Assembly (NCBI GenBank): GCA_937625935.1
Contig: OW569382.1
Span: 372,001 to 436,000 of the forward strand
Length of the DNA: 64,000 nt
From: Tetramitus jugosus
Taxonomy: Eukaryota > Protista > Heterolobosea
Direction of reading: 5' to 3'
The position numbers were made by a program, and so were the translations under genes. Positions 35,929-53,759 of this stretch are shown here, one piece after another (the first letter of the stretch is position 1; the number at the start of each line of letters is the position of its first letter). The notes under the pieces were generated by a model that saw only the letters and a list, made by a program, of their open reading frames with translations, did no database searches and was not told where the DNA came from.

Positions 35929-36500
35929 TTTTAAAATACAACCAGTGGTTGAGCTGTTTAATCGTTGTCTCTTCTCGTTACACAAGGTAACTAGTATGAT
36001 TGTGACGCAGAATGCAGTCGCTGTTGAATTATTTTTGTTACCAGCTATCTTGTGAAGAGGCGATGCATCACCTCAACACATCTCCTCTTGGTGTTGTCCA
36101 CAAACTGCTTAGCTTTCATCTTGGCGACCTCTTTCTTGATTCCACTCTTCTTGAGCCCTTTGGCCACTTGTTTAACCGCAAATAGTCATTGATTGTTTTT
36201 CTCTGCTCGTTCATTATTCGTTTTCCATTGTACCACTGCTGGTTATCAAACCAAATGTCGACATATTGTGACTTGTGCAGATCCAGAGCTTAACTTTGTT
36301 ACCACCTCCGTTGAGAGCAATCCTGGCCATTCTGGATATCGGACAATTAATAAGACAGTGAATGACCGTCTCTTGTTCGAAATTGCACTTGGGACTCGTC
36401 GTGTCCATATCTTCCACATTGTTAGAGGTGCTTTATCACCACCTTGTTTGTGGCTGCGATATGGCCAGGTTACAGCTCAAAATCGGAAGGAGGACGAAAA
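35929..36500 (-). mobile_element. LINE copy G: old degenerate 3' fragment (boundaries approximate)
   Basis: Translates to KCNFEQETVIHCLINC and KKSG..FVDNTKRRC..HRLF, homologous to the ORF2 C-terminus. 3' CAAC/GTTG hairpin at 35939-51. Confidence 0.7.
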
Positions 36501-36528
36501 TGTGTTTTTAAACATTGTCAAAGTTTAA

Positions 36529-37327
36529 GTTTTTTTGTTTTTTTTAATACAACACGTAGTTGCTCACTTTATTGTGCATCATTCTTTCAAATAGTTTCTC
36601 TTATTCTCACTGTGCCGCTCGAAGAGCGGCACTTATCTTTCCTTTCAGTGACGCTCGGAGATTGAGACACAGCGTATCCATGTCCACTACTCCATAGAGA
36701 TGTTGGACAACGGCCTTTGTGTGTATTGTGTGACTTTTCACCTGAGCCACAAACCATTCCAGTGCACGATCGACCCTGAAAGGGCATCTCATAAATTTAA
36801 AATCTACAGCACCTCCTAAACACTTAGACTGTATCCACCAAACCTTCTCCTCTTTCACCCTATCTCTATGTCGTCGCAAGAAGACTCGCCACAGCTGTTC
36901 CTTCTCTACGACCTCAAAACTATCATTGTACATTAACCTTGGGGTAGTGTCGGTTGAATGCTCGTGATTTCCATTGCGCTGTAGCATTTCAAGATCACTT
37001 GTCAAGTACTTGTATCTGCGAGAACTAATCCCAAAATTTCCATGTCTTTTGACCAATTCGCTATGCCTGATCCACTTTCCACCCACTGTCAATTGACTCC
37101 TCAGACCTATTCCCACCTTGAACAACCTTTTGATGATGTCATTTGGCTGAGAGAGTGCCAGATTGCAACTCAGACAGTTAACTTCATTCCCACAAGAAAT
37201 AGTGAGGTGGTTGGTGTGCATACGGACAGCAGACCACTTAAGATAGCTATGTGCGACCAGCTCAATCCTGTTGTTGGATTGGAATACATTCTCTACCTGG
37301 AATGTTTGTAGATGCCTGCTGATAGAG
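36529..37327 (-). mobile_element. LINE copy B: 5'-truncated, divergent family; TSD TGTCAAAGTTTAA (36516-28 / 37328-40)
   Basis: VFQSNNRIELVAHSYLKW aligns with IFQSNNRLREAKHSYLVW of copy C. Has a poly(A) tail, 3' hairpin and 13-bp TSD. Confidence 0.85.
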
Positions 37328-37423
37328 TGTCAAAGTTTAATTTATTTATTTTTTTTTTCCATACAACGTTTGTTGCCACTTTATTCTATACACTACTGTG
37401 AGTCATGATTTCGCTCGGCACCG

Positions 37424-40400
37424 TTAGGTGACGAGCAGTGTTTCACTCCTCTGCGCGACAGAGTTAATATATATCTTGTATAGTGTCTTGGTGCACGACC
37501 TCTTGACTGAGTCAATGACCCTCCTTATCTTTTTCTCTGCTTTACTTCTCTTCTTGCCGGAGAGCTTCATTTCGTCCAGGAGCACCTCCTTGAAGTCTCC
37601 TTCCTGACCCATCAGTCCCTGCAGCGTACCTTCAGGTGTTCTCTTGACATTTCGTGGTTGTATCTTTCCACTTACATACAAAACATCCTCGAACCATATA
37701 GGGACCTTGATAGAGCCTGGCAGACTCAACTTGCCCAGTTTCTCCTTCAGCTCTTCAACCAACTTGCTTCTTGCTTCCCTTGCAGGTTCGCACTCCACTA
37801 GCAGATGCACTATGGTTTCTGGAGCTTTGCAACAGTGTGTGCAAGTGACATCTATCAGTGGATTATACAGCATTCGAATACCAGTTCTTGTATGGAGAGT
37901 TCCACTCCTCACCTGATGATAGAACCACATTTCCTTTCTTTCGAGACCAAATGGGCACTTGAGAAAGTTATTCCACTCCTTGTCTTGCTGCAATGCAGCT
38001 TCCAACCACCATTCCGCGCGCTTTGAGATAATTTCACTCCTTATTGTTGAGAAATGATCAGTCAACTCCTTCCTGATGTCATTCCCAACAATCTCCCTAT
38101 CGCTGACAGTCACTAAGACCTTTTGCTGCACGACTCTTTGAGCAATCCACTTTTCATCGCATGGTTTACCGAGCAGTTCCATATAGGCACGAATTCTCAT
38201 GTACTTTTTTGTGCCAATACCAACCATCTTAAACTTTGACTTCGCTTCTTTGTAGGGTATTGTCATGATACCATCCTCATCAAAAAGCTGATGGTTCTTA
38301 AAAATCCCACTACCCCGGAGTAGCCTTGCATCGCCGGTGGGAAGGCACCAACCAACGCTGCACCTCTCGCATTCGTGACAATCATCGGTCGTGACTGTTA
38401 TACCAGAGCAATGGAGTAGTTTGGCGCACCAAACAAGATATGTGTGCTTCGCCTCACGGAGGCGGATATTGGATTTGAAGATGCTCGTTCGTATGAGCGT
38501 TTGTGATTGCTTGACATCATCAAGCGTATCCAATAGTAGCTTCCGTGCTTCAGTATCTCTCTTACCCGTCAGCATTCCCGCAATGAATGCCGTGACTTTT
38601 GAGGTTAGACTTTCCTTGAAATTGTTCAAACCAATTCCTCCCTGATCTCTCACCACTGCTAACAACTCGGAAGGGAACCTCTTAAGAGCAGCCGAACCAT
38701 GTTTGACGGCCTTTCGGCCGATCCCTTCGATCTCATTGAGCCATTTCTTTGGCCAGTGAGTAAACTCCGATGCGTAAAGGAACACTGGGTGCACACATGT
38801 GTTAACGATACGTGCTGTTTGAGCAGGGCTCAACTTGAGGAACTTGGCACGGTTCAGAATTTTCAGTACCTTCAATTTTGCTTGTTTCTTTTGCATTTCG
38901 GTATCACCATTGAGATTGGTGAACAAACCGAGAGCCCTGAAAACAGATTCTTTGTTCTTAGCTATCACTAGTTTGTCTGATACCCTAATCTCAGGCATTC
39001 CACCCTCCGCTTTTCTAACAAAGAACTCCAATTTGTCAGGATGCATAGTCAGACCCAAGCACTTGAGCACCTTGTGCATAGCATTCGCTGTATCCTCTAT
39101 GTCTTTAAGGCTTCCACTGAACAAGTTGCAGTCATCAACATATGCAACATTCCATATCCTTTGGGACATGGTCTGATCTTGCTCTCATTCCAGCATAGAG
39201 AAGTGCCAGTTGGTGCACTATCACATAAGATGTTGGTGACAAGGAGTCACCTTGTCTGGTGCCCCTGTCTATGTAGATTCTCCGAGACCTCACTTGAGTT
39301 CCAATCGTTGCCTCGTTTGCCTCGAGCATATTCTGAACGAGAGAGATGATACCCTCTGGGAAATTGAAGAAGCGATATGCAGCTGTGATCGCGTTATGTG
39401 GCACACTGTCGAATGCTTTGGATATGTCAGTAAGGAGAACGAAAAGCTGTTCATCCTTCCTGTTGGCGTGGTCGATAACGCCTCTGATGATAGATAGTTT
39501 CTCACGTATGTCCCTCAATTTGCGACCACCACCCTGTGTGTTACTGAACACACCTGCTTTTTCGGCGGCCATTGCCACCCTATGATTGAGCAATCTTGTG
39601 AAGACCTTCGACAGACTGCTCAATAGACAAATAGGTCTGTAGTTGGCAATGATCGAAGGACAACCCTTCTTGTAGGCAGGGACGAGTATGCACTTCTTCC
39701 AACTGCTTGGGAAAACACCAGTTTGCACTATGTTGTTAAAAAGTGTCACCAGAGCCTCCGCAAAATCGTATCCATAGTCCCTTTGCTTCGTCTTTTGGAG
39801 CTTCAGCATCTCGTTGCACACTCTATCAACACCCGGTGCTTTACCGTTCCTTAGCCATTTCACTGACTGTTGTATCTCTACTGCTGTGAACATTGGAAAC
39901 CACTGTTCCATGTTACTAGCATTGAAAGTCATTTCGCTCAGGAAATTCATGTCAGCAAACTCATGTTCGAACACCTCCTCGAAATACTTCGCTGCATGCT
40001 CGGCCACTTTCACCTGGTCAGTGACTATGGTGTCATGGAGCTTGAAACTTTTGAATCTTATCCTCATTGACCTTTTGCCGGTGGCAGCATTGAAGAAAAA
40101 CCGAGGATCCACAAACTCGGTGGTCCTAGCCTTGTATAGCCACTTTACAAATCTCTTGTTGGCTCTCCTAGCTCTTTCACCATGTATAAGCTTCTCCACT
40201 TTCGCCAGAGCAGTAAGGATTCCAAATTGACTGCTTTCTTCTCCGTACGCATGGCAAATTCTCACAACTTTGCTAGTCAACATCGACCCCTGTTTGGAGA
40301 CTTTCTCCACAAGAGCCTCTCTCTCTTTCATCCATCTTCTTACCCTTCTGTTGTCAATCCCTCTGGTCATCACTTTGTTCTCAGGGAAGACTTTTGCACC

Positions 40401-41276
40401 ATCCGTGATAGCACTAGTGATTTTCTCACACTGTTCATCAACCGAGAGATCCTCAAATTTGATCCTCTCGAGACTGTCAATTACAGACTGCGAGTAGGTA
40501 TTCCAGGACAGGTGACATCTCTTTGGGAACCTTGTCCTCGGCTCCTGCGGTATCTCAATACCATCCTTTACCCACTGGAGCTTCACCATAGTAGGGATAT
40601 GATCACTATACACACCATTCTTTGCATATGGGAGAACGTCCTTCACTACTTCAGAAGCAGATGGATTGACCCAAACAGAGTCTATCCTCGAGGAATATTG
40701 ATTCCTGAAAAAGGTATGAAAGTCCTCCTTGCTTGCAACCGAGTTGGCACTCATGAGCTGCAGCCCCTCAATCAGTGCTCTAAAGTGAGCACTGTTAGCA
40801 TCCAACTTTCTCGTGCTTCTATCAGTGGTCATCGTCACGGTGTTATGATCACCTCCAAGGATTAGCTTTCCCCTGTACGCTAACACTCTCAAAACTTCAT
40901 TTGTTGCCACATAATGATGCCCTCCGATTGCTTCTTTATGGAGGCCATAGTGGTTTACCAACTTCACACTCAGTTCACCACTTGCAACCTCGATCACTTG
41001 CACTCTATCATTGGAGAACAGCACCCTGTACTCTTGAACGCTAGTACGGCGTACTATTGCCATTACTCTATCTGTAACATCATTGCAGATCAGCATACAC
41101 CCCACCATCTCAAGCTGTCTGGAAAAAGAGGTTTTGAATCCCTCGTTCCTGCAACTTGCTTCCTGCAACATTAGAACATCAACTTCCGGGCTTGACTCTA
41201 AAAAGGCTACAACACCACTTCTTTTGTTTTTGAGTCCCCTGATGTTGTACCACACGACGTTTAAGGTCGTACTCAT
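37424..41276 (-). pseudogene. ORF2 endonuclease/reverse transcriptase, one frameshift near 39170-39220
   Basis: APE motifs YNIRGL, LQEA, GDHN, SRID and SDH. RT motifs KAPGVD, YRPICLL, DISKAFDSV, GTRQGDSLSP and YVDD. C-terminal CTHC..ETIVHLLVEC. No RNase H seen. Confidence 0.93.
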
Positions 41277-42281
41277 TGTTGGAGCAGTTCACCCTCGTCA
41301 TTGTTCTCAACAATGGGTTGAGTCTTATTGACATACATTGTACCTCCAGGAGAGCCTGTTAGAACTACCTTGCTCTGAGTCTGAACATCCTCCAGCTCAT
41401 TTGCTACTCTTTTTGTCCCTCTTCTGCCACCGCTTCTTGCAGTATAGTCGGTCAGCTTAGTTTGACCTTTTTCCTTGCCCACAACAGTGCGCCTCCCCTT
41501 AGTTTGTGCTACTGGTGTACTCATCATTTGCTCGTCACTCTCTGAATTCAGAGCCTCGACATCACCCATTTCCGAAACTGGATCTGGAACCGATTTTTCT
41601 CCTCTATCAACGCCACTCAAAAGTTTGCTAACCCTCTGTCTCATTTTCATCATTTCGGCCTTAAGTGCACGAATTTCTTCAACACTTCTCGCATAGTGAT
41701 CCATGATATTGTTCAGTTCACTCTGTAGCTGATTCACATTTCTCTTCAATTGCTCGATAGGATCTTGAGTACGGTGAACGTACTTTCTCGTTGTTGTATT
41801 GTCCATCGGAGTTATGCCAAGTAATACCTCAGCGAAGCTAGGTCGCCGAATTGCCTCTCAGTTCGACTCCGCATACATTGTCACGTCCAGCCCATTTTAT
41901 AATCTCCTCAACACTGGATTTACCGGCTCCCACCAGCACCACGTCATGCGTGGCCCTCATACGGCTGTTCGGAGCAGCTTGTGCACCGTTCAACATATTT
42001 CTGCAGTTGAACCATTCAATAAATTCCCACACTTTGTCATTTGTTGGGACTATCCAGGCTCTAAAATATTCACCCTTTCTGCTCACTTGCACTCTCTCCA
42101 CCCTTTCACTGCAACCATGTACAATTTTGTTGACCAAAGCTTCATTGGTAACATTGTTGCATTTGCCAGAAACAACAACCTCCTTTCTCTTGACTGCTGC
42201 ATCCTTGCTGATTTTTGTCCATAAAACAAATTCCTTTCTGCGTATAACTACCGCCTGTACTGACGGTCCTTGTGTAGACAT
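41273..42281 (-). pseudogene. ORF1 of LINE A (N-terminal alpha/beta domain + coiled coil), frameshift near 41850
   Basis: ATG at 42281 (MSTQG), 22 nt inside the 5' end. The second part (41806-41273) contains a coiled coil, and its TGA overlaps the ORF2 ATG (ATGA). Confidence 0.75.
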
Positions 42282-42347
42282 GTGTTCGCGTTTTTTGCTT
42301 TTTTCAAAGTTTAATTTATATACTTTCGGAGATTTTTTAAAGCATAA

Positions 42348-42444
42348 TCCCATATAGTCTAGCTGGTTAGGATATCCGGCTTTCACTTCCAAGCTGAAAT
42401 GCAAAAGTCCCCGGAAGACCCGGGTTCGAGTCCCGGTATGGGAG
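42348..42444 (+). tRNA. tRNA-Glu(TTC) with 24-nt intron (42386-42409)
   Basis: Acceptor stem TCCCATA/TATGGGA, A box TAGTCTAGCTGG, anticodon stem TCCGG-CTTTCA[intron]C-CCGGA, B box GGTTCGAGTCCC, and TTTTT terminator at 42448. Confidence 0.95.
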
Positions 42445-42459
42445 ATCTTTTTCTTGAAC

Positions 42460-42835
42460 CGGCTGCTGTTTTGAATGGTTTCTCTCTGCGACCTCCTTCG
42501 TCATTCTATTCATTCGCTACTTGCTTCGTAGCTCGTTTCTACTCCCAACATACCAAGCATGTACCGTTGCACCATTGCAGTGTATTGCTCTTGATCTGTC
42601 CATCAGCATGCTTGAGCCACTTTCCTTCTTTAACCAACTGAGCCATCACACAAGTACCAATCAGAAATGCTTAACAGTCTCTTCGGTTGAGACAGAGTAC
42701 AACGAAGTCAGTTGTTCTACTTCCCATAGGAAATAGACAAGTAGTTGATCACATGTGGACTACTGCATTACAACTGTTACTAGATTCCTTCACCAATTGT
42801 GTTGAAGCACAGACATGTGTTCTGCTTTTTACTTT
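42460..42835 (-). mobile_element. LINE remnant F: old 5' end only (left boundary uncertain)
   Basis: Minus strand AAAAAGTAAAAAGCAGAACACATGTCT matches the copy A 5' end AAAAAGCAAAAAACGCGAACACATGTCT; the downstream frame has stops. Confidence 0.55.
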
Positions 42836-42846
42836 TTAGACTTATA

Positions 42847-44217
42847 TTTTTTTTCCATACAACAGTTGTTGCCACTTTATTCAATACACTACTATGAGAC
42901 ATGTCGTCGCTCAGAACCGCAGGTTCTGAGCTATTGTGCAGATCTCTTCGCTAGCGAGTCTTTCCAGACTTTATACATTCGTTTGATGCAAGATCTTTTC
43001 ATTGCATTTACCAATCTTTTCACTTTTGTTTCCCGCTTCTTGCGGCTATATACTACTATTTCCTTCATCAGTACCTCCTTCTGGTCCTCCTCTTTACCCA
43101 TTAGTCCTGCCAGCAGCTCTTCCGATGTTCGACTGGGGTAGCATTTTGCCATCATCGTACACCGCATTGTCAAACCAGAGATTGAGCTTGGCTGGTCTCA
43201 TAAACTCCAGTTTGTTCAATGAAACCTTGAATTCTTCCACTAGTTCGCTTCTTGCTCTTTTGGCTTCTTCACACTCCACCAAGAGGTGTAGTATCGTCTC
43301 CGGTTCACTCTTGCAATGAGCACGCATGGTTTCCATCAGTGGTTCATACAGGTCTCGTACTACAGTCTTTGTGTGCAAGTCCGGTGATAAAACCACAACT
43401 CACCTCTTTCTAGACCGAAAGGGCACTTCAAAACCTCATTCCACTCCTTATCCTTCTGCAGGTCAGCTTCTAGCTTCCAGTTTCCATCTGATTCTTACTT
43501 GCGCGAAATATTCCATCAAACCTTCTCTTACATTGGGGTTACTGAGAACAATGCCATCTGCCGTCACTTCTACGGCATCTTTCATTGCTCTCTGCGTCCT
43601 CCATCTTTCGTCACATGGTTTTCCAAGGAGCTCCATGTAGGCCTTTATCCTAGAGTACCTTGCAGGACCGACTCCTTTCAGCTTGAACTTCTTCTTGGCC
43701 TCCTCCAGTTTAATGACCATTATTCCATCCTCATCGAACAGTTGTAAGTTTTTCGTGATTCCACTCTTCAAGAGCAGCTTGGCATCTCCTGAGGGGAGAT
43801 GCCAACCGATGCTGCACTTCTCGCATTCGTGACCACTCTTTTGGCTTACGATTACCTCCGCACTGTGGAGGAGTTTGGCGCACCATACCAAGTATGAATG
43901 CTTGGCCTCACGAAGACGATTGTTGGATTGGAAAATGCTCGACCGAATGAGCGTTTGTGTGTGCTTGACGTCATCAAGCGTATCCAACAGAAGTGTTCGT
44001 GCTTCAGTGTCTCTTTTTCCATGCAGCATCCCAGCGATGAACGCTGATATCTTGGACGTAAGACTCACTCTGAAATCATTGAGCCCTATTCCTCCTTTGT
44101 CCCTCTCTACTGATAGCAACATTGAGGGGAATCTCTTCATGGCATTTGATCCATGCTTCACTACCTTGCGACCAATACCTTCTATCTCGTTCATCCACTT
44201 CGTAGGCCAGTGGGCTT
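42847..44217 (-). mobile_element. LINE copy C: 5'-truncated, degenerate, related to A; TSD TTAGACTTATA
   Basis: ORF2 C-terminal homology (GMLHGKRDTEARTLLLDTLDDVK; ETILHLLVEC), poly(A), 3' hairpin; TTAGACTTATA at 42836 recurs at 47167 and 47692. Confidence 0.9.
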
Positions 44218-44837
44218 TTTTTTTTTAATACAACAAATGGTTGCGGAACTTTTATTTTTCTTTTACGTGAGAGCAGGCTTGCCTGCTCTCAATTGTCTAA
44301 CATGATGTGGTGCTTGCCCAGTGGAGTGGCAGGCCTACGCAACAGGATTCATTCTCTTCTTGGAATGTTGTTTTGATCCCTTCTTCAGGGATTCGTTGCG
44401 AGGGCCTCCACTACCATCTGGAGCACCACTGGTGAGGTCAGATGGCTCCGTAGTCCTAGCCAGTTGGTAGGACCTATGGAGAGCACCTGATTTGATACTG
44501 GCCAACCTGGCCGGGATCTTGTTGGCAGCAGTGTCACCAACGGTGACACGTGCTGATCGCTTCTTGTGTTCGTTGAGTTGGGGACTCTGTAACTCACAGT
44601 CGGGATTACTGAGATCCAACTCAACTGGATCTTCTTCGGTGGTTGTGCTTCTTGCACGGTCCACCATGATTGCTCGGGCAGCAATCTCTTTCTTGGCTTT
44701 CTTGAACACCTCTGAGGTGTTCAATACTAGCTCGAGGATTGCTCTGTTACGAGCATCCTCATCAATGGTGTTGTTGGTTGGCTCGGAGTCGTAGGTTCGA
44801 ATTCGGAGATTCGCTCCGGCGTCCTTGGGCGGAGTTA

Positions 44838-47062
44838 TTTGCAAATAAATTCGAGTGTATTTGTGCCGAGCCCTAACCAAGAGGAACTGCACCAAGCAGC
44901 AAGGAGGTCATCATCACTGGAAAGTGTGAGGGGGAGCCAAGAAGATTGGCTTGGATTTTGGTGATTTGCTCACCAGGGTCCAAGTCATCAAGAAGGGCCC
45001 CAAGAGGTTTGTTGCGTGGGTAACTCTTGCTACTAAAGACATAACCGGATAAAATTGTTGATTATCCCTCCACCATTCCAATGAAAATTCCAAATTTGTT
45101 TTTTCTTTGCTGGATCCAGTTTTGTAATATCTGTCAACGTCGGACGCTGCCTTGTTTGTCTCAATGCTTCGAAGGGTATATTGATTCAAACTATAATCCG
45201 AACTCGGTGGTGAATCATCTATACCTTCCTCTTCTAAATCTTCAACATTATATTCCAATTTGATTCTTTCGATGACTTCTCTTGTCAAAAATAATCTATC
45301 ATTTTGATTTAAATGTTTGTCTATCCATATAGACTTTGTTCTAGGATCTAATGTAGCTGTTATATAGTAAACAAGACTACTATCCATCAGAGAATAGTAT
45401 TTATCATACTTCTTCTTACCTAACTTCACTGCATTCACCAAATCATCGGTCAAATTTGCAAATTTCTTCCTTTTGCCGATCACATCATTTAACAAGTCAT
45501 GAAGAGCATAATATACTGCTAGTGAATTAACAATCTGTGGTTTCTGAGTTGATAAAAAGTTTGTAAAGTCGTCAAACGTTTTCAGAAGCACCCTCAAGTT
45601 TGTTAGCTGTATCCAGTCATCACTTGATAATAAAAGGTCAGGGACCAAATCCGTTGCATATCGATTCAACTCACTAGGGAAACGAAATACATCGTCAATC
45701 ATTTTGAATGTAGAATTCCACCGAGTATCGACATCATAGTCAATGAGCTTTTTTTGTTGATCAGATGTAACCAATTCCAACCACTTGTTTTTTCTTTGCG
45801 TACTTCCTCTGATATACAATGCCATTGTTCTTATTTTCATGATAGCACTCAGAGAACCAACTTTCTCATTTTTCATCAACTTTTTGATTGCATCCTCAGA
45901 GTCTTTCCGAGCTCCAGCTTTGATGACAGTCATTATCGCTTTTACAACCAAATTGATTATGTGTGCAAGACAACGAATGAGACTTTCAGTTCCTTGATAT
46001 CAGATTGTTCGATCGTGTCTACCCCTCAATGCTGTTTTCAGGGAAGAAACAAGGGAACCCGAAAGTGTGTCATTGTTTTTTGCATTGTCTGATGTGATGG
46101 TTAGTAGTTTGGTTAGTAAATCTAATTCATTAAGCGTTTCAATGACATGTTCCGCAATATTGGATCCTGTATGGCAGCCTTGGATGGATTTAAAATCAAG
46201 TACGCGCTGATAAAGTTCAAATTCAGGGCCAATCCATGAACCAATGATACCAATAAATGAATTGTTGTGTGGGCTAGTCCAAGCATCAACGGAAATCGCA
46301 ATTGAATTGCATGTAGAAAGTAGAAAGTGTTTCAACTGTTCTCTTGAGTTCTTGAACTCTGATTCAACTAACGTTTTCAATTTCTTGGCCGATATCAGCA
46401 TGTTCAACTCCATTGTTCGAAAATAAATGTTTTAGATATGGACTTTCGGTAAAACAGAATGGAAGATTCTCCATAACAATTAAGCGTACAATATCTAGAC
46501 AGAACTGTTTTTTCTTGTCCATAATTAACTCAGGTGTTGAAATACTGCTTTCGTTGACCATTTTATCTCGATGGTCTCTTTCAAGGTGCCTGTGCATATT
46601 GCTGGTTGAGTTGTGACGGCAACTCTCCAGTACAGACCAAGTATCACAGTAATTGCATTTGATTATTTGGTCATTTTCTTTTCCACCATCTCTATTTATC
46701 GGTGATACCGAAAAATGCTTCCAAACCGAACTTCTTCTTTGATTCTTGTTTGTGTTTCTTGACTTGTTTTTCTTTGCTGCTGCGTTGGTTAGTTCCTGCA
46801 ATAACTCTTGATCAATATGTGCGATATCTTCGTATTCTTGAATATCATCATCCTCTTCGGGGTCCATTTGACTATAGTCATGCTGAATGCGGCGTCTCTT
46901 GTGGCTATTTTCCTCTTGATTCATTTTTGTTATTTGCGAATCACTCGAGTTTTTTCGAATTTGAATTTGTTTTTGGGTGTGTGAAAATTTCAATTTGAAC
47001 CTGTTTTTGAATTTGACTGATTCGTTTATTCGCGAGTTTACTCGAACTTGTGCCGAGCCCTA
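44838..47062 (-). mobile_element. hAT DNA transposon (defective), TIR TAGGGCTCGGCACAA, 8-bp TSD CTCTTGGT; one end inverted
   Basis: TIR at 47048-62 followed by CTCTTGGT. A second TIR at 44861-75 is followed by ACCAAGAG, the reverse complement of the TSD. Confidence 0.88.
45021..46924 (-). pseudogene. hAT transposase with BED zinc finger; two frameshifts, C-terminally truncated
   Basis: Motifs SSVWKHF..CNYC..TSNMHRHLERDH, SVDAWTS, TSDNAKN, RCLAHII, TRWNST and WWR..YPVMSLVAR; final Glu motif absent. Confidence 0.9.
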
Positions 47063-47179
47063 CTCTTGGTGCTGTGGTCCACATATCATAGCGTGGATTC
47101 TCATACTCACGAACAACAGGGGGTGTGTGTTCGTTTTTTTATCGGCGTTTTTGGTCAGTGGGCTTCTTAGACTTATAGT

Positions 47180-47689
47180 TTTTTTTCCATACAACAATTG
47201 TTGCCTCTTTATTCAATACACTACTGTGAGTCATGATTCCGCTCAGCACCGTCAGGTGCTGAGCAGTGCTTCACTCCTCTTCACGACAGAATTAATATAT
47301 ACCTTGTGTAGTGCCTTGACACAGGCCCTCTTCATGGAATCCACCATACATCTTATCACCTTCTCTGTCTCCCTTTGTTTCCTGTCGGAGAGCACCATTT
47401 CATCCAATAGTTCTTTCCTAAAGTCCCCCTCTTTTCCCATTAGTCCCTCTAACAGTCCTTCAGAGGATCGCTTGATATTTCGTGGTTGTATCTTGCCCTT
47501 TTCATATATCGTATCGTCAAACCAGAGCACAATTTTGGCTGAGTCCGGTAGCATCAGCCTATCCAATTTAGCTTTCACCTCTTCTACGAGTTTCTTTCTG
47601 GCTGTAAGGGCAGCGTCGCACTCTACCAACAGATGTAAAATGCTCTCCGGTGCAGCGCCACAATTAAGACGCTTTGCATCTAAACTGGA
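47180..47689 (-). mobile_element. LINE copy E: 5'-truncated (~510 bp); TSD TCTTAGACTTATAGT (47165-79 / 47690-704)
   Basis: ORF2 C-terminus (ESILHLLVEC, GKIQPRNIKR), poly(A), hairpin and 15-bp TSD; 5' end is 42 bp upstream of tRNA-Ile. Confidence 0.92.
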
Positions 47690-47731
47690 TCTTAGACTTA
47701 TAGTGTAACTGAGTAGAAAGTTAATATTCAA

Positions 47732-47804
47732 GGTCGTTTAGCTCAGTCGGTAGAGCGTTGGTCTAATAAGCCATTGGTCGCAGGTTCGATCCCTGCAACG
47801 ACCA
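47732..47804 (+). tRNA. tRNA-Ile(AAT)
   Basis: Acceptor stem GGTCGTT/AACGACC, TAGCTCAGTCGGTAGAGC, anticodon loop CTAATAA, GGTTCGATCCC, and TTTT terminator. Confidence 0.95.
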
Positions 47805-48166: not shown

Positions 48167-51100
48167 ATGCAAGCGACTCATCCATCATTTTTTCTTCATG
48201 GTCAGAGTCCATCAACGACAACAACTACAACAACAATAAATCTACGGCATCAACTACAACAACCCATTACTAGTAAAAAGAGAGGAAAAACGAAACATCA
48301 AGAATCATCATCATCATCATTCTATGAGAGTCATCATCAAAAACAAAAACAACAACGATTAGTGATCAACACGCATGCACTCGCACTGTTCATCATCATC
48401 ACGATATATACCCTAGTTTCATCATTTTTCTCACTACCATTTACTAGGACCATGTTTGATATCAATCATCCTCCAATGATGATGATGATGATACCATTTG
48501 TAGGTGCACAGAGCTTTGATCATCCACTGAATGAATATGTTTTTGGTTCTCCATTATCTCCCTTATTGTCCTTTGTATCACCCTATTCAAGCTCATTTTC
48601 ATCTTCTTATCCATCGTATGAAAAAGTGTTCAACAATGAGTCAGTGTTGAAATTTGGTCAGAGTTGTGCAATCACAGGACCCAATCGTTCACCTTGTCTA
48701 GAGTTTAATAAGGGAGTGAAGGCAGCTCTGCATGAAATCAATAAGAATGGACTATGGGGAAATTCCAAGAGAATTCAAGTGGAGACAGTGGACGATGCGT
48801 ACAAGGCAACTCTTACATACAATAATACGATGGCATTCTTAGAGAGAGATGACGTGTTTGGTTTGTTTGGTTATGTGGGATCAGCGAATGCTTATGTATT
48901 GTATCAGTTGTTTGTTTCGTTTTTTTTTTGATGTCATGTTTTTTTTTCATACTTGTGTGCAGTGTTTGCATCATTATGTTTTTTGTATTATGTTTTTTGT
49001 ATTGTGTGAGCTAACATGTCCTCTTGCTTGTTTTTATATCCTTTTTTCATTGTTCGTGATGTAGGCTGTGTATGCTGAGGTTGTTGAGTCGGGTATACCG
49101 CTTATTTCAACACTGTCGGGTGCTTCTTTTCTGAGGACTCCGTTCTACCCTAACATTATCAATATCAGAGCTGGATATATGGAAGAAGTGGCTGCGATGG
49201 TTGATTTTCTAGTGAATGAAAAACACATTTTTCGAATGTCGTTGCTCTATCAGAATGATGCATTTGGATTAGCAATACGATCAAGTGTTTACACTGTGCT
49301 TACACAGCTCGAACTCTCACTGCAGTCAGAGGGCAATTACTCTACAATCGATTACAAGCTCGATGAAGCTATTGAGGATATATCAGAGGGTGAACCACGA
49401 GCCATTTTAATTGGTGGATCATATGTAGTGGCTGCTCAATTTGTGAGAAAAGTGAGAGAGTCTCAGCTCTTCAACAGACCACGAGACATTGTGTTTATTG
49501 CTATATCTTTTGGAGGAACAGACGCTTTTGCTCAAGAGTTACAAGCGAATGAATGGTACAATATTTATTCAACCCAAGTCATGCTTTCGCCATTGGACTA
49601 CTCGAAGACGTTGAATCAAAATTTTCTGAAATCTTTGAGAGAGATCGGTGAATTCTCAGAACCTTCTTTTCTGTCACTCGAGGGATATTTGTCAATGCGA
49701 CTGGTAGCCACTGTGATTCAGCAAATTACAGGAAATTTGACTCGAACAAACTTCTTGACCACACTCTATTCACTGTCATCGATTGTGGTAGATGGAGTAT
49801 CTGTCGGACCGTTCTCTTGGTGCTCATCACCCGGAAAGTATAATTACTCTTCAGTGATCTCTAATATACCCACAACTACATGCAAGGATTGTAATAGTGG
49901 ATTAGACTCAGTGTGGATTGCTACCATTCAATCCACCTCGCACAATACCTCGCGCTTTGTGGATTCGGATAACCAATATTCCTGGAGTGCAACTTGTGGA
50001 TATGAACCAAGTTCAATTAGTTTACCAATCGTGTTCGGTCAGAGCATTCAAAGTAATGATACACGTGGTAATTCGATGACATTTGGTATTAGCATTGCCT
50101 TTGAGCAATACAATCAACTTGCAACAGTGAACAACAGAAGGAAACTTGTTCTAGTGACCATGACCCATAGCAATAATACATCACTATTGAGAAACATGTG
50201 GGATATGTTGAATGATAACAACATATTGGGATTCGTGGGTTTCACTGGACAAATAGTACGAACTGTAGCACTGCCAGAGTTGCAAACAGAGATGGCTGGC
50301 ATTCCATTAATTGGAACCAATATTGCCGATGCCGACATGATTCATCCGTACATCTCCAATGTTATTAATATTAGACTTTCGGAACGTGAAGAACTTGCGT
50401 CCATAGTCAACTATGTCCTCAACACTTTTGGATATACAAGAATATCAATGATTTGTCCTTCTACATATATGAGCGTGTTTAGCTTCTTGGACGAAGTATT
50501 GACAACACTTGGTTTAGAAATTGAGAGTTACTATCAGTATAATCGAACTATGCTTGTCAATGACGAGTCATACATTCAGATGTTGCGCAATTTGACAGTG
50601 AATGGATCTGATCCTCAAGTAATCATATTTGCTGGTAGATCTGACGCCATTTTATCAAAGATATTAACTATGATAGAAACGAGTGATGTTGGATTACGAG
50701 ATGATGTAATGGTCTCATTTGTCTCGACTCTCGCATTGAATGTGATCGCCGAACAGTTATCAGCAAACGGTATTACTCGTCGGGTGTATGCAAGCTCTGT
50801 TGTCCCTGCTCCTACAGATGTCACCAATTCATTAATCGTCGCTTTTCAACAAGCAGCATCATCCAATTCAAACTCTATTGAACTATCGCGGTTTGCAGCT
50901 GTCGAGGGTTATTTAATCGGCAAGTTCGTTGCTAATATGTTGAGTCTCAGAGGAACTGACGTTGATTTATCATCTGAACAGTTGCTAAGGGAAATCTATG
51001 TGTGGGGTGAGTACTATATCGAGAGTGTCCATTTAGGAAAATATGTGAATGACTCAGGAGATCAGTCACCCTGCAATGTAGGCATGCGAACTATTTACCT

Positions 51101-53759
51101 CACTGAGTATAATCCGACCGGAGGTTCATTCGATAAGATTGCAGACACAGATGGAACCTTCACAGTGCCTTCAACTGAATGTGGACTTACGACGAATCAA
51201 TCGATCGCAAACAGTATGAAAAAACCCTATATATTTGGCTATCTTCGTAAAGCCGGAACAGAAATATCAGAATACGAGAAGGGTTTAACAGCATTGTTCG
51301 CCTCTGTCAATTCGAATACTGGAAGGGTACTTGGACGATTAAAACTTGTTTCTGTCGAGTATGAAGAAGGTGTTTCTCCACTCTCTGCTGTTAAAGAGTT
51401 GATAGATAAGTATAAAGTTTACGCGATTGTTGGACTGGGCTCCATGTACGACATATCTGAAGTGGCAAAGTATATGGCAACGAGAAAAGTTCCACTAATT
51501 GGACCCGTTGCCGGTAATTTAGACATTAGAAAACCGTACAACCGTTATGTTGTTAATATTCAGCCGTCAATTGTTGATGAGTTTGTCGCTGCTGCTAGAT
51601 ATCTGATGACGTATGGGAGTGCCAACTCTTTCGTAATTGCATATGACTCTGGTAGCTCTTACTGGAGTCAATGTCTCAGTGATATCATATCATTTGTTAG
51701 AAAGGATCAGAAACAACATATCAAAATCTCAGCAACAATATCCATATCCATGAGCGACTATGCTAGTTATCGCCGAGTTCAGTACAGCCGAGGCAGTATC
51801 CTGGTTGTTTTAGCAGAGCCCGAATTATCAGCCTCACTCATTATTTTCCTGCTACAGACGACGTACAGTGCTGATTTTGTCCTTCCATCTGAAACTGGAA
51901 CACAAGAGCTGGCTACAATGTTGAAGCCCTACGCCAGTACACTGTCATCAAGACGTATGCTGTACATGACTCAAACCTTGTCACCACCTGCTAATATACA
52001 ACGAAGATCATTGATGGGTGCCTGGGATGCCGATGATGCGTTCGGAAACAACTTCTTATCCATCTACAGTCAAGTCTACCCTAATTCGTATCCCACACCC
52101 CAAACTATGAACGGTTATTTGGCAGGTCGCTTGATTGATGAGGTGTTTTCTTTGATGTCCAAAACTGTTGGAATTACCACAGTTGACTCAGAAACATTTT
52201 TGAATACTCTCTACACTGCTTCCTCCTTTAACTTTGATTATGTAAAGTTAGGGCCGGTTGGAGTGGAGTGCTCAAAGACTGTCAAACGAACCGATAACTC
52301 CCGTCTGTCATTCGACTATTGTTCCAGTCTCTCTATTGGCTGTGATTGTAATCAAGCAGCCCGAACAGTGTACATGTCCTCTCTGAATTCAATCGTCAAT
52401 GAGCTTCGATTTACTAACATTATCGAAGGTGAATTAACCTTTGCCGATTGCGGTGTTACAGCGACTCGCAATACCAAAGTTATCAATCCAGGTATCTACT
52501 CTCTAATTTCAATTGTTGGTGTGTTGGCGCTCGTGTTCCTGTGCGTTTTGGTATTCGTGGTGTACAAGTGCATTCGAAGGAAGGATCGAACAAGATATGC
52601 TCCAAAAAAGAATGGTCTCTTGACATGCGTTTTTACAGATGTCCAGAGCAGTACATCACTGTGGCAGAATCACGAGAAACCAATGAAGCTTGCTCTTCAA
52701 ATGCATAATCGGGTGATGAGACAGAATTTGGTCGAGTTCAGAGGTCACGAAGTTAAAACTGTTGGTGATTCGTTTATGTGTGTGTTCCGACAACCCTGTG
52801 ATGCAGTTGATTGGGCTGTTCGAGTTCAAAAAGATCTGTTGGAGGTCAAGTGGCCATCAGACATTATTTGCAATTATGAGTGCAGGCAGCAGTGGGATGA
52901 TGAATCAAAAGCACTCATGTGGAGTGGTCTTCGAGTCCGTATTGGTATTCATTATGGCTATGCTGACTATAACTTTGACATCACGACGAGGCGTCCTGAT
53001 TACTATGGTCCAACTATCAATTGTGCAGCCCGAGTAGAGTCAGTGGCTCGTGGTGGTGAGATTTTGATCACGGATGCCGTTTATCGTCGAACACAGTTCA
53101 TGTTCTCTGATACGAGATTTAGAGAAGATAACCAGTGGGCTCAAGGACCTCCCATTGATACAACTGGAGCCTCATCAGCTGCTGTTAGCACCACAAATAT
53201 CGAAACTGAGTCGTCAACATTCTACAGTCAAGAGTCCGGTAAGGAACGAGTCAGAGATAAGAGGATGAAGCGAGTCAAGGCCGCACGATTCGAGTCCTAT
53301 CGTTTAATTGATGTGGGGCAATTCTCATTGAAGGGCATCTCTGATGCAGTACGTCTTTATCAGGTCGCACCATTGAGTCATGCAATCTCAAAACGTGACT
53401 TCCCAGAGTTCCAAATTGATAGTACGAAGGATGATACACCTATGATGGGAGAAATAGACGATACTGCATTGACTACTTCTAACAAGAGGTCGACCATGCC
53501 CTCAACAACAATAGACATTGAATTGATTGACGTGAGTTGCGAAGTTGTAGCCAACCAGGTGTCAATCCAAGATGAGTCAAGGTCTCCCTCTGTTACACCG
53601 CGCAACGAGGCTGAAATCAAGAATGTGCCCGATGAGATTACACTCACAAAAGATGGTTCAGATGCTGGAGATGCTGCCACCAACGAATCACAACTTAGCA
53701 TTGTTCCCTCTATCGACTCTGAAGTCCCGCACAAGGACAAAGAAGAGCCGCAACAATAA
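48167..53759 (+). CDS. Receptor-type adenylate cyclase with tandem periplasmic-binding-protein-like ectodomains; intron 48896-49064
   Basis: Three repeats of FGQ/FGY..G(I/V)PLI..(I/V)INIR..EGY. Single TM. Class III cyclase motifs FTDVQSST, EVKTVGDSFM, RVRIGIH and DYYGPTINCAARVE. Confidence 0.9.

What the first reader, a model, noticed from the sequence alone, without database searches (positions are those of the whole stretch)
35929..47804. tRNA-upstream-targeting LINE system: insertions at -40 to -51 bp of tRNA genes, all in one orientation
Seen: seven related non-LTR copies, all on the minus strand with 5' ends facing the start of a plus-strand tRNA. Reconstructing from the TSDs, insertion points relative to tRNA +1 are A -44, B -46 (tRNA-Glu) and C -40, E -42, D -51, F about -40 (tRNA-Ile); G has no readable TSD. 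The TSD sequences differ (TCAAAGTTTAATTTAT, TTAGACTTATA, CAGTGGGCTT), so targeting looks positional rather than sequence-specific. No LINE copy was recognised elsewhere in the 64 kb. Known: Dictyostelium TRE5-A inserts about 48 bp upstream of tRNAs in this orientation through ORF1-TFIIIB contact, and yeast Ty1/Ty3 target Pol III genes. Inference: a TRE5-like safe-harbour system in what appears to be a different protist lineage, possibly convergent and undescribed.
Basis: partly seen in the sequence, partly recalled or inferred. Interest (0 to 1): 0.95.

Follow-up and report, generated by a model that had tools for sequence, protein, structure and literature searches.

The report
tRNA-gene-targeting LINEs in a heterolobosean
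A family of jumping genes (LINE retrotransposons) in this small protist genome inserts almost only 40-58 bases upstream of tRNA and 5S rRNA genes, always head-to-head. This is the geometry known from Dictyostelium TRE5, but the host appears to belong to an unrelated branch of eukaryotes.

Summary
The window holds seven non-LTR copies, all on the minus strand. They are stacked upstream of tRNA-Glu(TTC) and tRNA-Ile(AAT), with poly-A tails, different TSDs, and 5' ends 40-51 bp from tRNA +1. Genome-wide, 20 of the 30 best ORF2 loci have a tRNA gene just beyond the LINE 5' end, always head-to-head (chance P<1e-20). Most of the others are stacks or cut loci, and two remain unexplained. Two dispersed 5S rRNA genes carry copies in the same geometry, so the cue is probably the Pol III complex, not tRNA sequence. 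There are at least three autonomous subfamilies (ORF1 = tandem RRM plus coiled coil; ORF2 = APE-RT-CCHC; 5'UTR about 10-25 nt). A 1.38-kb ORF1-only partner is also abundant (at least 40 copies). PGK phylogeny places the host inside Heterolobosea, near Acrasis, not in Amoebozoa. The closest full-length public relatives of ORF2 are 31% identical or less, and none of the named ones is dictyostelid. I found no paper describing this system. A direct tree with TRE5 could not be built, so convergence is likely but not proven. TFIIIB tethering is inferred, not shown. First-stage notes of this scan flagged the same system on other pieces of this genome. Verdict: real and robust, a new variant of a known kind.

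The parts
35929..36515 (-). Copy G: a 5'-truncated LINE remnant, outermost (oldest) in the tRNA-Glu stack. It holds the ORF2 C-terminus of the '43%' subfamily plus a 3'UTR. The 3' motif is degenerate and no TSD is readable.
   Evidence: tblastn 36072-36417 matches S43 ORF2 residues 1078-1203. The 3' end sequence is.
36530..37327 (-). Copy B: a 5'-truncated LINE of the '43%' subfamily with an internal deletion. Its TSD is (G)TCAAAGTTTAA, at about -46 from tRNA-Glu before A inserted.
   Evidence: 93% identity to L031 ORF2 residues 869-1085.
37346..42303 (-). Copy A: a full-length 4958-bp LINE.
- 5'UTR of about 22 nt, ending ...CGCGAACAC before the ATG.
- ORF1 at 41273-42281, with one frameshift.
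- ORF2 (APE-RT-CCHC) at 37424-41276, with one frameshift inside the RT.
- AATAAA signal, a CAAC/GTTG hairpin and a poly-A tail.
- 16-bp TSD at 37330-37345 and 42304-42319.
42348..42444 (+). tRNA-Glu(TTC) with a 24-nt intron. It is the target of the stack G, B, A.
42450..42835 (-). Copy F: a degraded remnant, outermost in the tRNA-Ile stack. Its 5' end resembles a LINE 5' end (...AGAACACATG) and abuts the TTAGACTTATA target. It has no detectable ORF similarity. The left limit is uncertain.
   Evidence: Sequence. No tblastn hit.
42847..44207 (-). Copy C: a 5'-truncated A-like LINE (ORF2 C-terminal 450 aa, 54% identical to A). Its TSD TTAGACTTATA lay at -40 to -30 from tRNA-Ile.
44218..47155 (-). 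Copy D: an ORF1-only non-autonomous element. Intact relatives are 1.38 kb with a 414-aa ORF1 homologue. D inserted into the 5' tip of C with TSD CAGTGGGCTT. D proper is 44218-44828 plus 47065-47155. The stretch between is a hAT-like insertion with a rearrangement.
44829..47064 (-). hAT-like DNA transposon nested in D, with a BED zinc finger and a hAT dimerisation domain. An inverted piece of D's ORF1 lies at 44871-45020. About 600 nt of D is missing.
   Evidence: Pfam hits. Sequence. Comparison with an intact D.
47180..47689 (-). Copy E: a 510-bp 5'-truncated A-like LINE, innermost (youngest) in the tRNA-Ile stack. Its 15-bp TSD TCTTAGACTTATAGT lies at 47165-47179 and 47690-47704, which is -42 to -28.
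47732..47804 (+). tRNA-Ile(AAT). It is the target of the stack F, C, D, E.

Best explanation
This is a multi-subfamily group of APE-type non-LTR retrotransposons whose integration is directed to RNA polymerase III genes.

Shown:
- Copies have poly-A tails and TSDs of 10-21 bp.
- 5' truncation is frequent, as expected for target-primed reverse transcription.
- The 5' end always faces the start of a tRNA gene, or in two cases a 5S rRNA gene, 40-58 bp upstream, in the opposite transcriptional orientation.
- The target sequences are unrelated to each other.
- New copies insert between the gene and older copies. This builds stacks in which the innermost copy is the youngest.

Inferred from the TSD positions:
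- The first nick is on the strand that carries the tRNA sense sequence, at about -28/-29 for the A-type subfamily and about -38 to -44 for the other subfamilies and the ORF1-only element.
- The second nick is 10-21 bp further upstream.
- The A-type first nick lies at the upstream edge of an AT-rich, TATA-like peak at -30 to -24.
- The gene-proximal TSD copy leaves the tRNA upstream region intact.

Inferred by analogy with TRE5-A:
- An element protein (ORF1p or ORF2p) reads the asymmetric TFIIIB/TFIIIC-DNA complex rather than a DNA sequence. This would fix both distance and orientation.

Other parts of the system:
- The ORF1-only elements share the 3' AAUAAA-hairpin-poly-A end and are probably mobilised in trans by the autonomous ORF2p.

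Likely consequence:
- The system gives a safe harbour in a gene-dense 26-Mb genome.
For: Position and orientation:
- 20 of 30 ORF2 loci have a tRNA directly beyond the 5' end, all head-to-head.
- Most of the rest are stacks or cut loci.
- In 17 full-length copies the ORF1 ATG lies 52-84 nt from tRNA +1.
- Exact TSD positions are -44 to -29, -42 to -28 and -44 to -30 for the A-type. They are -57 to -39, -55 to -40, -58 to -38 and -57 to -41 for the other subfamilies.
- Chance P is below 1e-20.

Target range:
- At least 15 tRNA isoacceptor types are hit.
- Two 5S genes have copies ending at -57 and at about -50 to -61.
- In an unselected sample of 53 tRNA genes, 9 carry an element upstream. All 9 are in the expected orientation and none is downstream.

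Element anatomy:
- ORF2 has APE and RT domains and a CX2CX8HX4C motif.
- ORF1 is a tandem RRM plus coiled coil.
- The 3' motif is shared by all types.
- tRNA upstream regions have an AT peak at -30 to -24.

Signs of recent activity:
- Several copies have uninterrupted ORF1 and ORF2 frames.
- D-type copies are 90-98% identical to each other.

Literature:
- The TRE5 geometry and the ORF1p-TFIIIB interaction are described in PMC5911963 and PMC5006619.
Against: - No protein contact was shown. A complex prediction of the ORF1 RRM region with the host TBP core gave no answer.
The full distribution is therefore unknown.
- One full-length copy (L004, C16:361k) has no recognisable Pol III gene beyond its 5' end.
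- One pair of fragments near a contig end (L035) has no tRNA within 5 kb.
- Both U6 genes are unoccupied.
- The host assignment rests on one protein (PGK).
Confidence: 0.8

Rival explanations
1. The endonuclease or another DNA-binding part of the element reads DNA directly, with no protein tether. The cue would be the AT-rich TATA-like element at -30 to -24, the conserved initiator-like ATATCAA/ATATGA motif at -9 to -1, or TBP-independent DNA shape.
For: - An AT peak lies at -30 to -24, and there is a recurrent motif just before +1.
- The A-type first nick falls at the edge of the AT peak, and five of seven inferred nick sites precede AT.
Against: - The motifs are degenerate, and such AT-rich strings must be very common in a 41% GC genome. 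Yet copies are confined to Pol III genes.
- Subfamilies nick about 10-15 bp apart but keep the same gene, side and orientation.
- 5S genes, with different upstream sequence, are hit at the same distance.
- In TRE5-A, targeting needs the B box and TFIIIC (PMC5911963).
Confidence: 0.12
2. The family is a true TRE5 relative, by common ancestry or by horizontal transfer from a dictyostelid. On this reading the shared targeting is homologous, not convergent.
For: - The geometry is the same.
- The ORF2 domain order is the same (APE-RT-zinc finger).
- Both have an oligo-A tail and two overlapping ORFs.
Against: - An exhaustive phmmer search over 1.84 billion representatives gave no full-length relative above 31% identity.
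- The 20 top hits that I named are arthropod, fish and algal proteins or unnamed. None is dictyostelid.
- The RT scores better against R2 structures (E 4e-21) than against human L1 ORF2p (E 4e-10), whereas TRE elements are listed under L1.
- TRE5-A has modular UTRs of hundreds of bases and a -1 frameshift. Here the 5'UTR is 10-25 nt and ORF2 has its own ATG overlapping the ORF1 stop.
- The host is a heterolobosean.
Confidence: 0.12
3. Integration is random, and only copies next to tRNA genes survive purifying selection in a compact genome. Alternatively, tRNA-plus-LINE units spread by segmental duplication.
For: The genome is gene-dense, so most random insertions would be harmful.
Against: - Selection cannot produce an 18-bp window, a single orientation, and TSDs at fixed offsets.
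- Other intergenic DNA in the 64-kb window holds no copy.
- Each insertion has its own TSD and its own tRNA type.
- Two duplicated tRNA-Glu genes carry different insertions.
Confidence: 0.02

Closest known systems
Dictyostelium discoideum TRE5-A (formerly DRE) and TRE5-like elements of other dictyostelids
   Same: - Non-LTR element with an APE-RT-zinc-finger ORF2, an ORF1 and an oligo-A tail.
- Integrates about 44-54 bp upstream of tRNA genes in the opposite transcriptional orientation.
- Also hits 5S genes.
- Forms a safe harbour in a compact genome (PMC5911963, PMC5006619).
   Different: - The host is a heterolobosean, not an amoebozoan.
- No detectable close sequence relationship.
- The 5'UTR is 10-25 nt instead of A/B modules with a promoter.
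- There are no B/C-module 3'UTRs.
- The ORF1 stop and the ORF2 ATG overlap, rather than a -1 frameshift.
- ORF1 is a tandem RRM plus coiled coil.
- Subfamilies have two offset classes about 10-15 bp apart.
Polysphondylium pallidum NLTR-B
   Same: A non-LTR element unrelated to the TREs, found 39-64 bp upstream of tRNA genes. It is a precedent for an independent origin of this geometry (PMC5006619).
   Different: - NLTR-B carries an RNase H domain and three separate ORFs. No RNase H was detected here.
- The host supergroup is different.
Yeast Ty3 and Ty1 LTR retrotransposons, and Dictyostelium DGLT-A
   Same: They target the upstream side of Pol III genes through the Pol III machinery (TFIIIB for Ty3, the AC40 subunit for Ty1). 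The evolutionary logic is the same.
   Different: - They are LTR elements that use an integrase, not target-primed reverse transcription.
- They insert at other distances, and Ty3 and DGLT-A insert in either orientation.
Mammalian HAL1 (half-L1), an ORF1-only non-autonomous LINE derivative (from my own knowledge)
   Same: Copy D and its 40 or more relatives keep an ORF1 homologue and the LINE 3' end but have no ORF2.
   Different: - The D-type is tRNA/5S-targeted.
- Its copies are young (90-98% identical).
- It is more numerous than any single autonomous subfamily sampled here.

Membership tests
Pol III-gene-targeted retrotransposons (functional class) | Most copies lie at a fixed short distance from Pol III-transcribed genes | tested here: met
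   - 20 of 30 ORF2 loci and 4 of 5 D-type loci lie directly at a tRNA.
- 5' ends are at -40 to -58.
Pol III-gene-targeted retrotransposons (functional class) | Targeting is independent of target sequence and covers many different Pol III genes | tested here: met
   - At least 15 tRNA isoacceptor types and two 5S genes are hit.
- The TSDs are unrelated in sequence.
Pol III-gene-targeted retrotransposons (functional class) | Physical interaction of an element protein with TFIIIB, TFIIIC or Pol III | tested here: inconclusive
   The complex prediction of the ORF1 RRM region with the TBP core gave no answer. This needs an experiment.
TRE5 family (Dictyostelia) | Integration about 44-54 bp upstream of tRNA genes in the opposite orientation | tested here: met
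   compared with PMC5911963.
TRE5 family (Dictyostelia) | ORF2 with APE, RT and a zinc finger, and no RNase H | tested here: met
   Pfam APE and RVT_1. An invariant CX2CX8HX4C motif.
TRE5 family (Dictyostelia) | Modular 5'UTR (A and B modules, with promoter) and 3'UTR (B and C modules) | tested here: not met
   - The ORF1 ATG lies 52-84 nt from tRNA +1, of which 40-58 nt is flank, so the 5'UTR is about 10-25 nt.
- The 3'UTR of the A-type is under 80 nt.
TRE5 family (Dictyostelia) | ORF2 is translated through a -1 frameshift from ORF1 | tested here: not met
   ORF2 has its own ATG overlapping the ORF1 stop: ATGA in the A-type and ATGTTGA in the 46% type.
TRE5 family (Dictyostelia) | RT groups with TRE5 elements in a phylogeny | not testable with these tools
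- Indirect evidence: no dictyostelid among the 20 named top hits, and full-length relatives at 31% identity or less.
L1 clade of LINEs | L1-type ORF1p (coiled coil, RRM and CTD; Pfam Transposase_22) and an RT closest to L1 | tested here: not met
   - No Transposase_22 hit.
- The domain order is RRM-RRM-coiled coil.
- PDB phmmer gives R2 at E 4e-21 against human L1 ORF2p at E 4e-10.
- Clade placement remains open.

The most novel reading that the evidence does not exclude
The elements may be effectively promoter-less: only 10-25 nt precede the ORF1 start codon. On this reading they depend on their fixed head-to-head position for their own transcription. They would use the TBP/TFIIIB platform and the nucleosome-free, AT-rich upstream region of the Pol III gene as a borrowed, divergent promoter. 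Targeting would then be a requirement for expression, not only a safe harbour. It would have arisen independently of TRE5 in a third eukaryotic supergroup. An ORF1-only hyper-parasite exploits the same site.
Probability: 0.2. Interest if true: 0.8.

Novelty: new variant of a known kind. Interest (0 to 1): 0.66.

Why it matters
Until now, targeting of Pol III genes by retrotransposons was documented in yeasts (Ty1, Ty3 and relatives) and in dictyostelid amoebae (TRE5, TRE3, NLTR, DGLT-A, Skipper-2). It is a textbook case of convergent safe-harbour evolution in compact genomes.

- **A third supergroup.** An apparently independent LINE lineage in Discoba shows the same distance and orientation. 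This would suggest that the upstream edge of the TFIIIB-DNA complex is an unusually easy target for target-primed reverse transcription to evolve towards.
- **A natural comparative system.** The genome offers several subfamilies with two different offsets, an ORF1-only partner, and both tRNA and 5S targets. This allows one to ask which protein surface reads the Pol III complex.
- **Practical uses.**
  - The stacks are age-ordered insertion records.
  - Position-specific LINEs are of interest as models for targeted integration.

Tried and rejected
**Analyses that gave little or nothing**
- **Protein contact.** A complex prediction of ORF1 residues 1-178 with the host TBP core gave 'no answer'. 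It is not evidence either way.
- **Sequencing runs.**
  - Laying contigs of four public runs on copy A gave only fragmented repeat contigs.
  - There was no clean empty-site allele and no information on transcript ends.
  - No RNA run was on record.
- **Fetching more of the genome.** Occupancy was instead estimated from coordinates.
- **SSU rRNA search.** It failed with a server error.
- **Clade naming by homologue names.**
  - The two word-indexed ORF2 searches and both Atlas searches returned unnamed or generic LINE proteins.
  - The clade therefore stays unassigned.
- **Source assembly of the closest ORF2.** Accession GCA_037189345.1 appears in no searchable paper. That contig and the ENA contig are too short to show a target.

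**Ideas dropped**
- **A dictyostelid host.** The PGK tree rejects it.
- **A special leader on 5'-truncated copies.**
  - I first thought these copies carried an (A)nCGCAG(A)n leader.
  - It is the 5'UTR of an older element, duplicated as a TSD when a new copy inserted into a stack.

Full report
**1. What is in the window**

ARAGORN and Rfam find two tRNA genes, both on the plus strand. With introns allowed, the first is tRNA-Glu(TTC) with a 24-nt intron at 42348-42444. The second is tRNA-Ile(AAT) at 47732-47804.

The large minus-strand ORFs between them carry an AP-endonuclease domain, a reverse transcriptase domain and a coiled-coil ORF1. tblastn with proteins of three LINE subfamilies hits only 36072-47683, always on the minus strand, and nowhere else in the 64 kb.

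Reading the junctions gives this map:

| Feature | Coordinates | Notes |
|---|---|---|
| G | 35929 to about 36515 | no readable TSD |
| B | about 36530-37327 | TSD (G)TCAAAGTTTAA |
| A | 37346-42303 | full length, 4958 bp; 16-bp TSD at -44 to -29 |
| tRNA-Glu | 42348-42444 | target of G, B, A |
| F | about 42450-42835 | degraded remnant |
| C | 42847-44207 | TSD TTAGACTTATA |
| D | 44218-44828 plus 47065-47155 | TSD CAGTGGGCTT |
| E | 47180-47689 | 15-bp TSD at -42 to -28 |
| tRNA-Ile | 47732-47804 | target of F, C, D, E |

- Every copy ends in a poly-A tail on its sense strand.
- The TSDs nest as expected if each new copy entered between the tRNA and the previous copy.
- Copy A is full length but has one frameshift in ORF1 and one in the RT.

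**2.

The window is contig 39 of a 26.35-Mb assembly in 56 contigs.

*Starting from the elements*
- The N-terminal half of ORF2 finds 68 matches, which fall into about 54 places and several subfamilies: about 62-90%, about 46% and about 43% identical to copy A.
- Of the 30 best loci, each with only 1.5 kb of flank, 20 contain a tRNA gene. It always lies beyond the LINE 5' end and on the opposite strand.
- 5'-truncated copies abut the tRNA just as closely: L013 (His), L024 (Arg), L025 (Val), L029 (Gln).
- In most loci without a tRNA, another poly-A element starts right after the 5' end, so they are stacks like the one in the window. Others are cut by the locus edge. Longer fetches confirmed stacks of two to four elements.

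*Distances*
- In 17 full-length copies of five element types, the ORF1 start codon lies 52-84 nt from tRNA +1.
- A-type TSDs lie at -44 to -29, -42 to -28 and -44 to -30.
- TSDs of the other subfamilies lie at -57 to -39, -55 to -40, -58 to -38 and -57 to -41.
- There are therefore two offset classes about one helical turn apart.

*Statistics and exceptions*
- The chance probability of 20 of 30 is below 3e-20, even assuming 1602 tRNA genes.
- Two exceptions remain. L004 has a flank with no Rfam match. L035 is a pair of fragments near a contig end.

*Starting from the genes*
- Nine of 53 unselected nuclear tRNA genes carry an ORF2-bearing or D-type copy upstream.
- All nine are in the expected orientation and none is downstream.

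**3. Not only tRNA genes**

- 5S rRNA genes are dispersed, with at least 47 copies.
- Two of them have an element 5' end head-to-head upstream.
  - One is a D-type copy truncated at -57.
  - The other is an ORF2-bearing copy ending at about -50 to -61.
- The two U6 genes are unoccupied.
- tRNA and 5S genes share TFIIIC and TFIIIB but not their internal promoter sequences. This points to the Pol III transcription complex as the cue.
- TRE5-A likewise integrates upstream of 5S genes (PMC5911963).

**4. Anatomy of the elements**

*ORF1 (about 340-460 aa)*
- A conserved N-terminal region of about 165 aa is followed by a long helix and a variable, basic, disordered tail.
- The AlphaFold model is confident for residues 8-230.
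- It matches tandem-RRM proteins such as HuR, IMP3, U2AF65 and the RRM-RRM-coiled-coil DBHS proteins.
- No L1-type Transposase_22 domain is detected.

*ORF2 (about 1280-1320 aa)*
- The order is APE, then RT, then an invariant CX2CX8HX4C motif. No RNase H was detected.
- ORF2 has its own ATG overlapping the ORF1 stop.

*Untranslated regions*
- The 5'UTR is only about 10-25 nt. It consists of A-runs plus CGCGAACAC or CGCAG.
- All element types share a 3' end made of AAUAAA, a short CAAC(C)/(G)GTTG hairpin with a variable loop, UAU, and poly-A.

*Copy D*
- Copy D belongs to a 1.38-kb family that encodes only a 414-aa ORF1 homologue.
- It has at least 40 copies at 90-98% identity.
- Four of five fetched loci lie directly at a tRNA and the fifth is in a stack.
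- It is probably mobilised in trans.
- In the window it is broken by a hAT-like DNA transposon with an inverted piece of D beside it.

*Signs of activity*
- Several autonomous copies have uninterrupted ORF1 and ORF2 frames.

**5. Mechanism**

*Shown*
- TPRT-type hallmarks.
- A fixed distance.
- A fixed orientation.
- Independence from target sequence.

*Inferred from TSD geometry*
- The first nick is on the tRNA-sense strand at the gene-proximal end of the TSD. That is about -28/-29 for the A-type and about -38 to -44 for the other types.
- The second nick is 10-21 bp upstream.

*Context*
- The 28 tRNA upstream regions in hand show an AT-rich peak at -30 to -24 and an AT-rich stretch ending in A at -1.
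- This fits a TATA-like element and an initiator.
- The A-type nick lies at the upstream edge of the AT peak.
- The duplicated target leaves the promoter-proximal copy intact.

*Inferred by analogy*
- TRE5-A ORF1p binds TBP, Brf1 and Bdp1, and TRE5-A targeting needs the B box (PMC5911963). By analogy, an element protein here would dock on TFIIIB/TFIIIC.
- My one in-silico test gave no answer.

**6. Host and relatives**

*Host*
- The intronless PGK gene in the window has as its best named relatives only Heterolobosea, at 62-65% identity: strain BB2, Acrasis kona, Pharyngomonas, three Naegleria species and Willaertia. Closer unnamed metagenomic sequences also exist.
- In an ML tree the window PGK nests within Heterolobosea.
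  - It is sister to Acrasis plus one metagenomic sequence (support 90/90).
  - It is separated from opisthokonts at 100/100.
- This is one marker only.
- Near-identical LINE words occur in groundwater, soil, rhizosphere and freshwater metagenomes.

*Element relatives*
- An exhaustive phmmer search of 1.84 billion representatives found only short fragments and two partial ORF2s above 45% identity.
- All other relatives are at 21-38%.
- Of the 20 looked up, 13 carry a name: 11 are arthropod, fish or green-algal proteins and two are metagenome products labelled 'exonuclease III'. None is dictyostelid.
- Against solved structures, the RT scores better with R2 proteins than with human L1 ORF2p.

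**7. Comparison with what is known**

- The geometry is that of TRE5 (and of NLTR-B).
- The ORF2 domain order also matches TRE5.
- The modular UTRs, the -1 frameshift and the host do not match.
- Spaller et al. found TRE-like elements only in dictyostelids (PMC5006619).
- Searches for Heterolobosea together with retrotransposons and tRNA genes found nothing relevant. A 2026 preprint on heterolobosean transposable elements does not mention tRNA at all.
- I therefore file this as working like TRE5, but not as a demonstrated member of that family.
- It is a new variant of a known kind.

**8. Limits**

- No joint tree with TRE5 could be built.
- The host rests on one marker.
- Only about 40 loci were read.
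- No RNA data were available.
- No protein contact was shown.

**9.

- Read laying was given 5,201 letters.

First-stage notes of this scan had flagged the same system on other pieces of this genome (s1-550847, s1-532687, s1-553191, s1-537725).

Noticed in passing
window 44829-47064: A hAT-like DNA transposon is nested in copy D, with a BED zinc finger at 46364-46993(-) and a hAT dimerisation domain at 44914-45951(-). The end motif GTGCCGAGCCCTA occurs twice in the same orientation (about 44858 and 47052). An inverted 150-nt piece of D's ORF1 lies at 44871-45020, and ACCAAGAG / CTCTTGGT flank it as an inverted 8-bp target. This looks like an aberrant (alternative) transposition that inverted and deleted part of D.
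   Followed up: partly
G000 genome-wide, e.g. L047:1501-2883 and window 44218-47155: An ORF1-only 1.38-kb non-autonomous element (414-aa tandem-RRM protein, no ORF2) has at least 40 copies at 90-98% identity. It is the most homogeneous of the tRNA-targeted families sampled. It is comparable to mammalian HAL1.
   Followed up: partly
G000, 47 places listed: 5S rRNA genes are dispersed singly over many contigs (at least 47 near-identical copies) rather than in tandem arrays or on the rDNA unit. Two are targeted by the LINE system.
   Followed up: partly
28 tRNA upstream regions, including window 42303-42347 and 47687-47731: tRNA genes of this organism have an AT-rich peak at -30 to -24 (up to 96% A+T at -25). 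A recurrent ATATCAA/ATATGA-like motif ends at -1. These are probably an upstream TATA-like element and a Pol III initiator.
   Followed up: partly
L004:4620-5100 (G000:C16, about 364490-364970): A full-length A-type LINE has a 5' end that is not followed by a tRNA, a 5S gene or any Rfam family. Instead there is a GC-rich hairpin (GGGGCGAGAACGAACCCC), long T-runs and unrelated sequence. It could be an unknown Pol III gene, another element or a rearrangement.
   Followed up: partly
L035:2779-4105 (G000:C45, about 2.8-4.1 kb from the contig end): A minus-strand ORF2 fragment is joined directly to a plus-strand ORF1-type 3' fragment, with no tRNA within 5 kb. It is probably a recombination product near a chromosome end.
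   Followed up: no
window 21171-22916(+): An intact 581-aa ORF carries a piggyBac-type transposase domain (DDE_Tnp_1_7). It is a DNA transposon or a domesticated gene far from the tRNA genes.
   Followed up: no
window 49068-53759(+): A 1563-aa intronless ORF combines periplasmic-binding-protein/ANF-receptor domains with an adenylate/guanylate cyclase domain, giving a receptor-type cyclase. It lies immediately downstream of tRNA-Ile.
   Followed up: no
L036:1754-3730 (G000:C46, about 124.7-126.7 kb): Two divergently oriented tRNA-Glu(CTC) genes share their 42-nt upstream region. Each carries its own independent LINE stack on its upstream side.
   Followed up: partly
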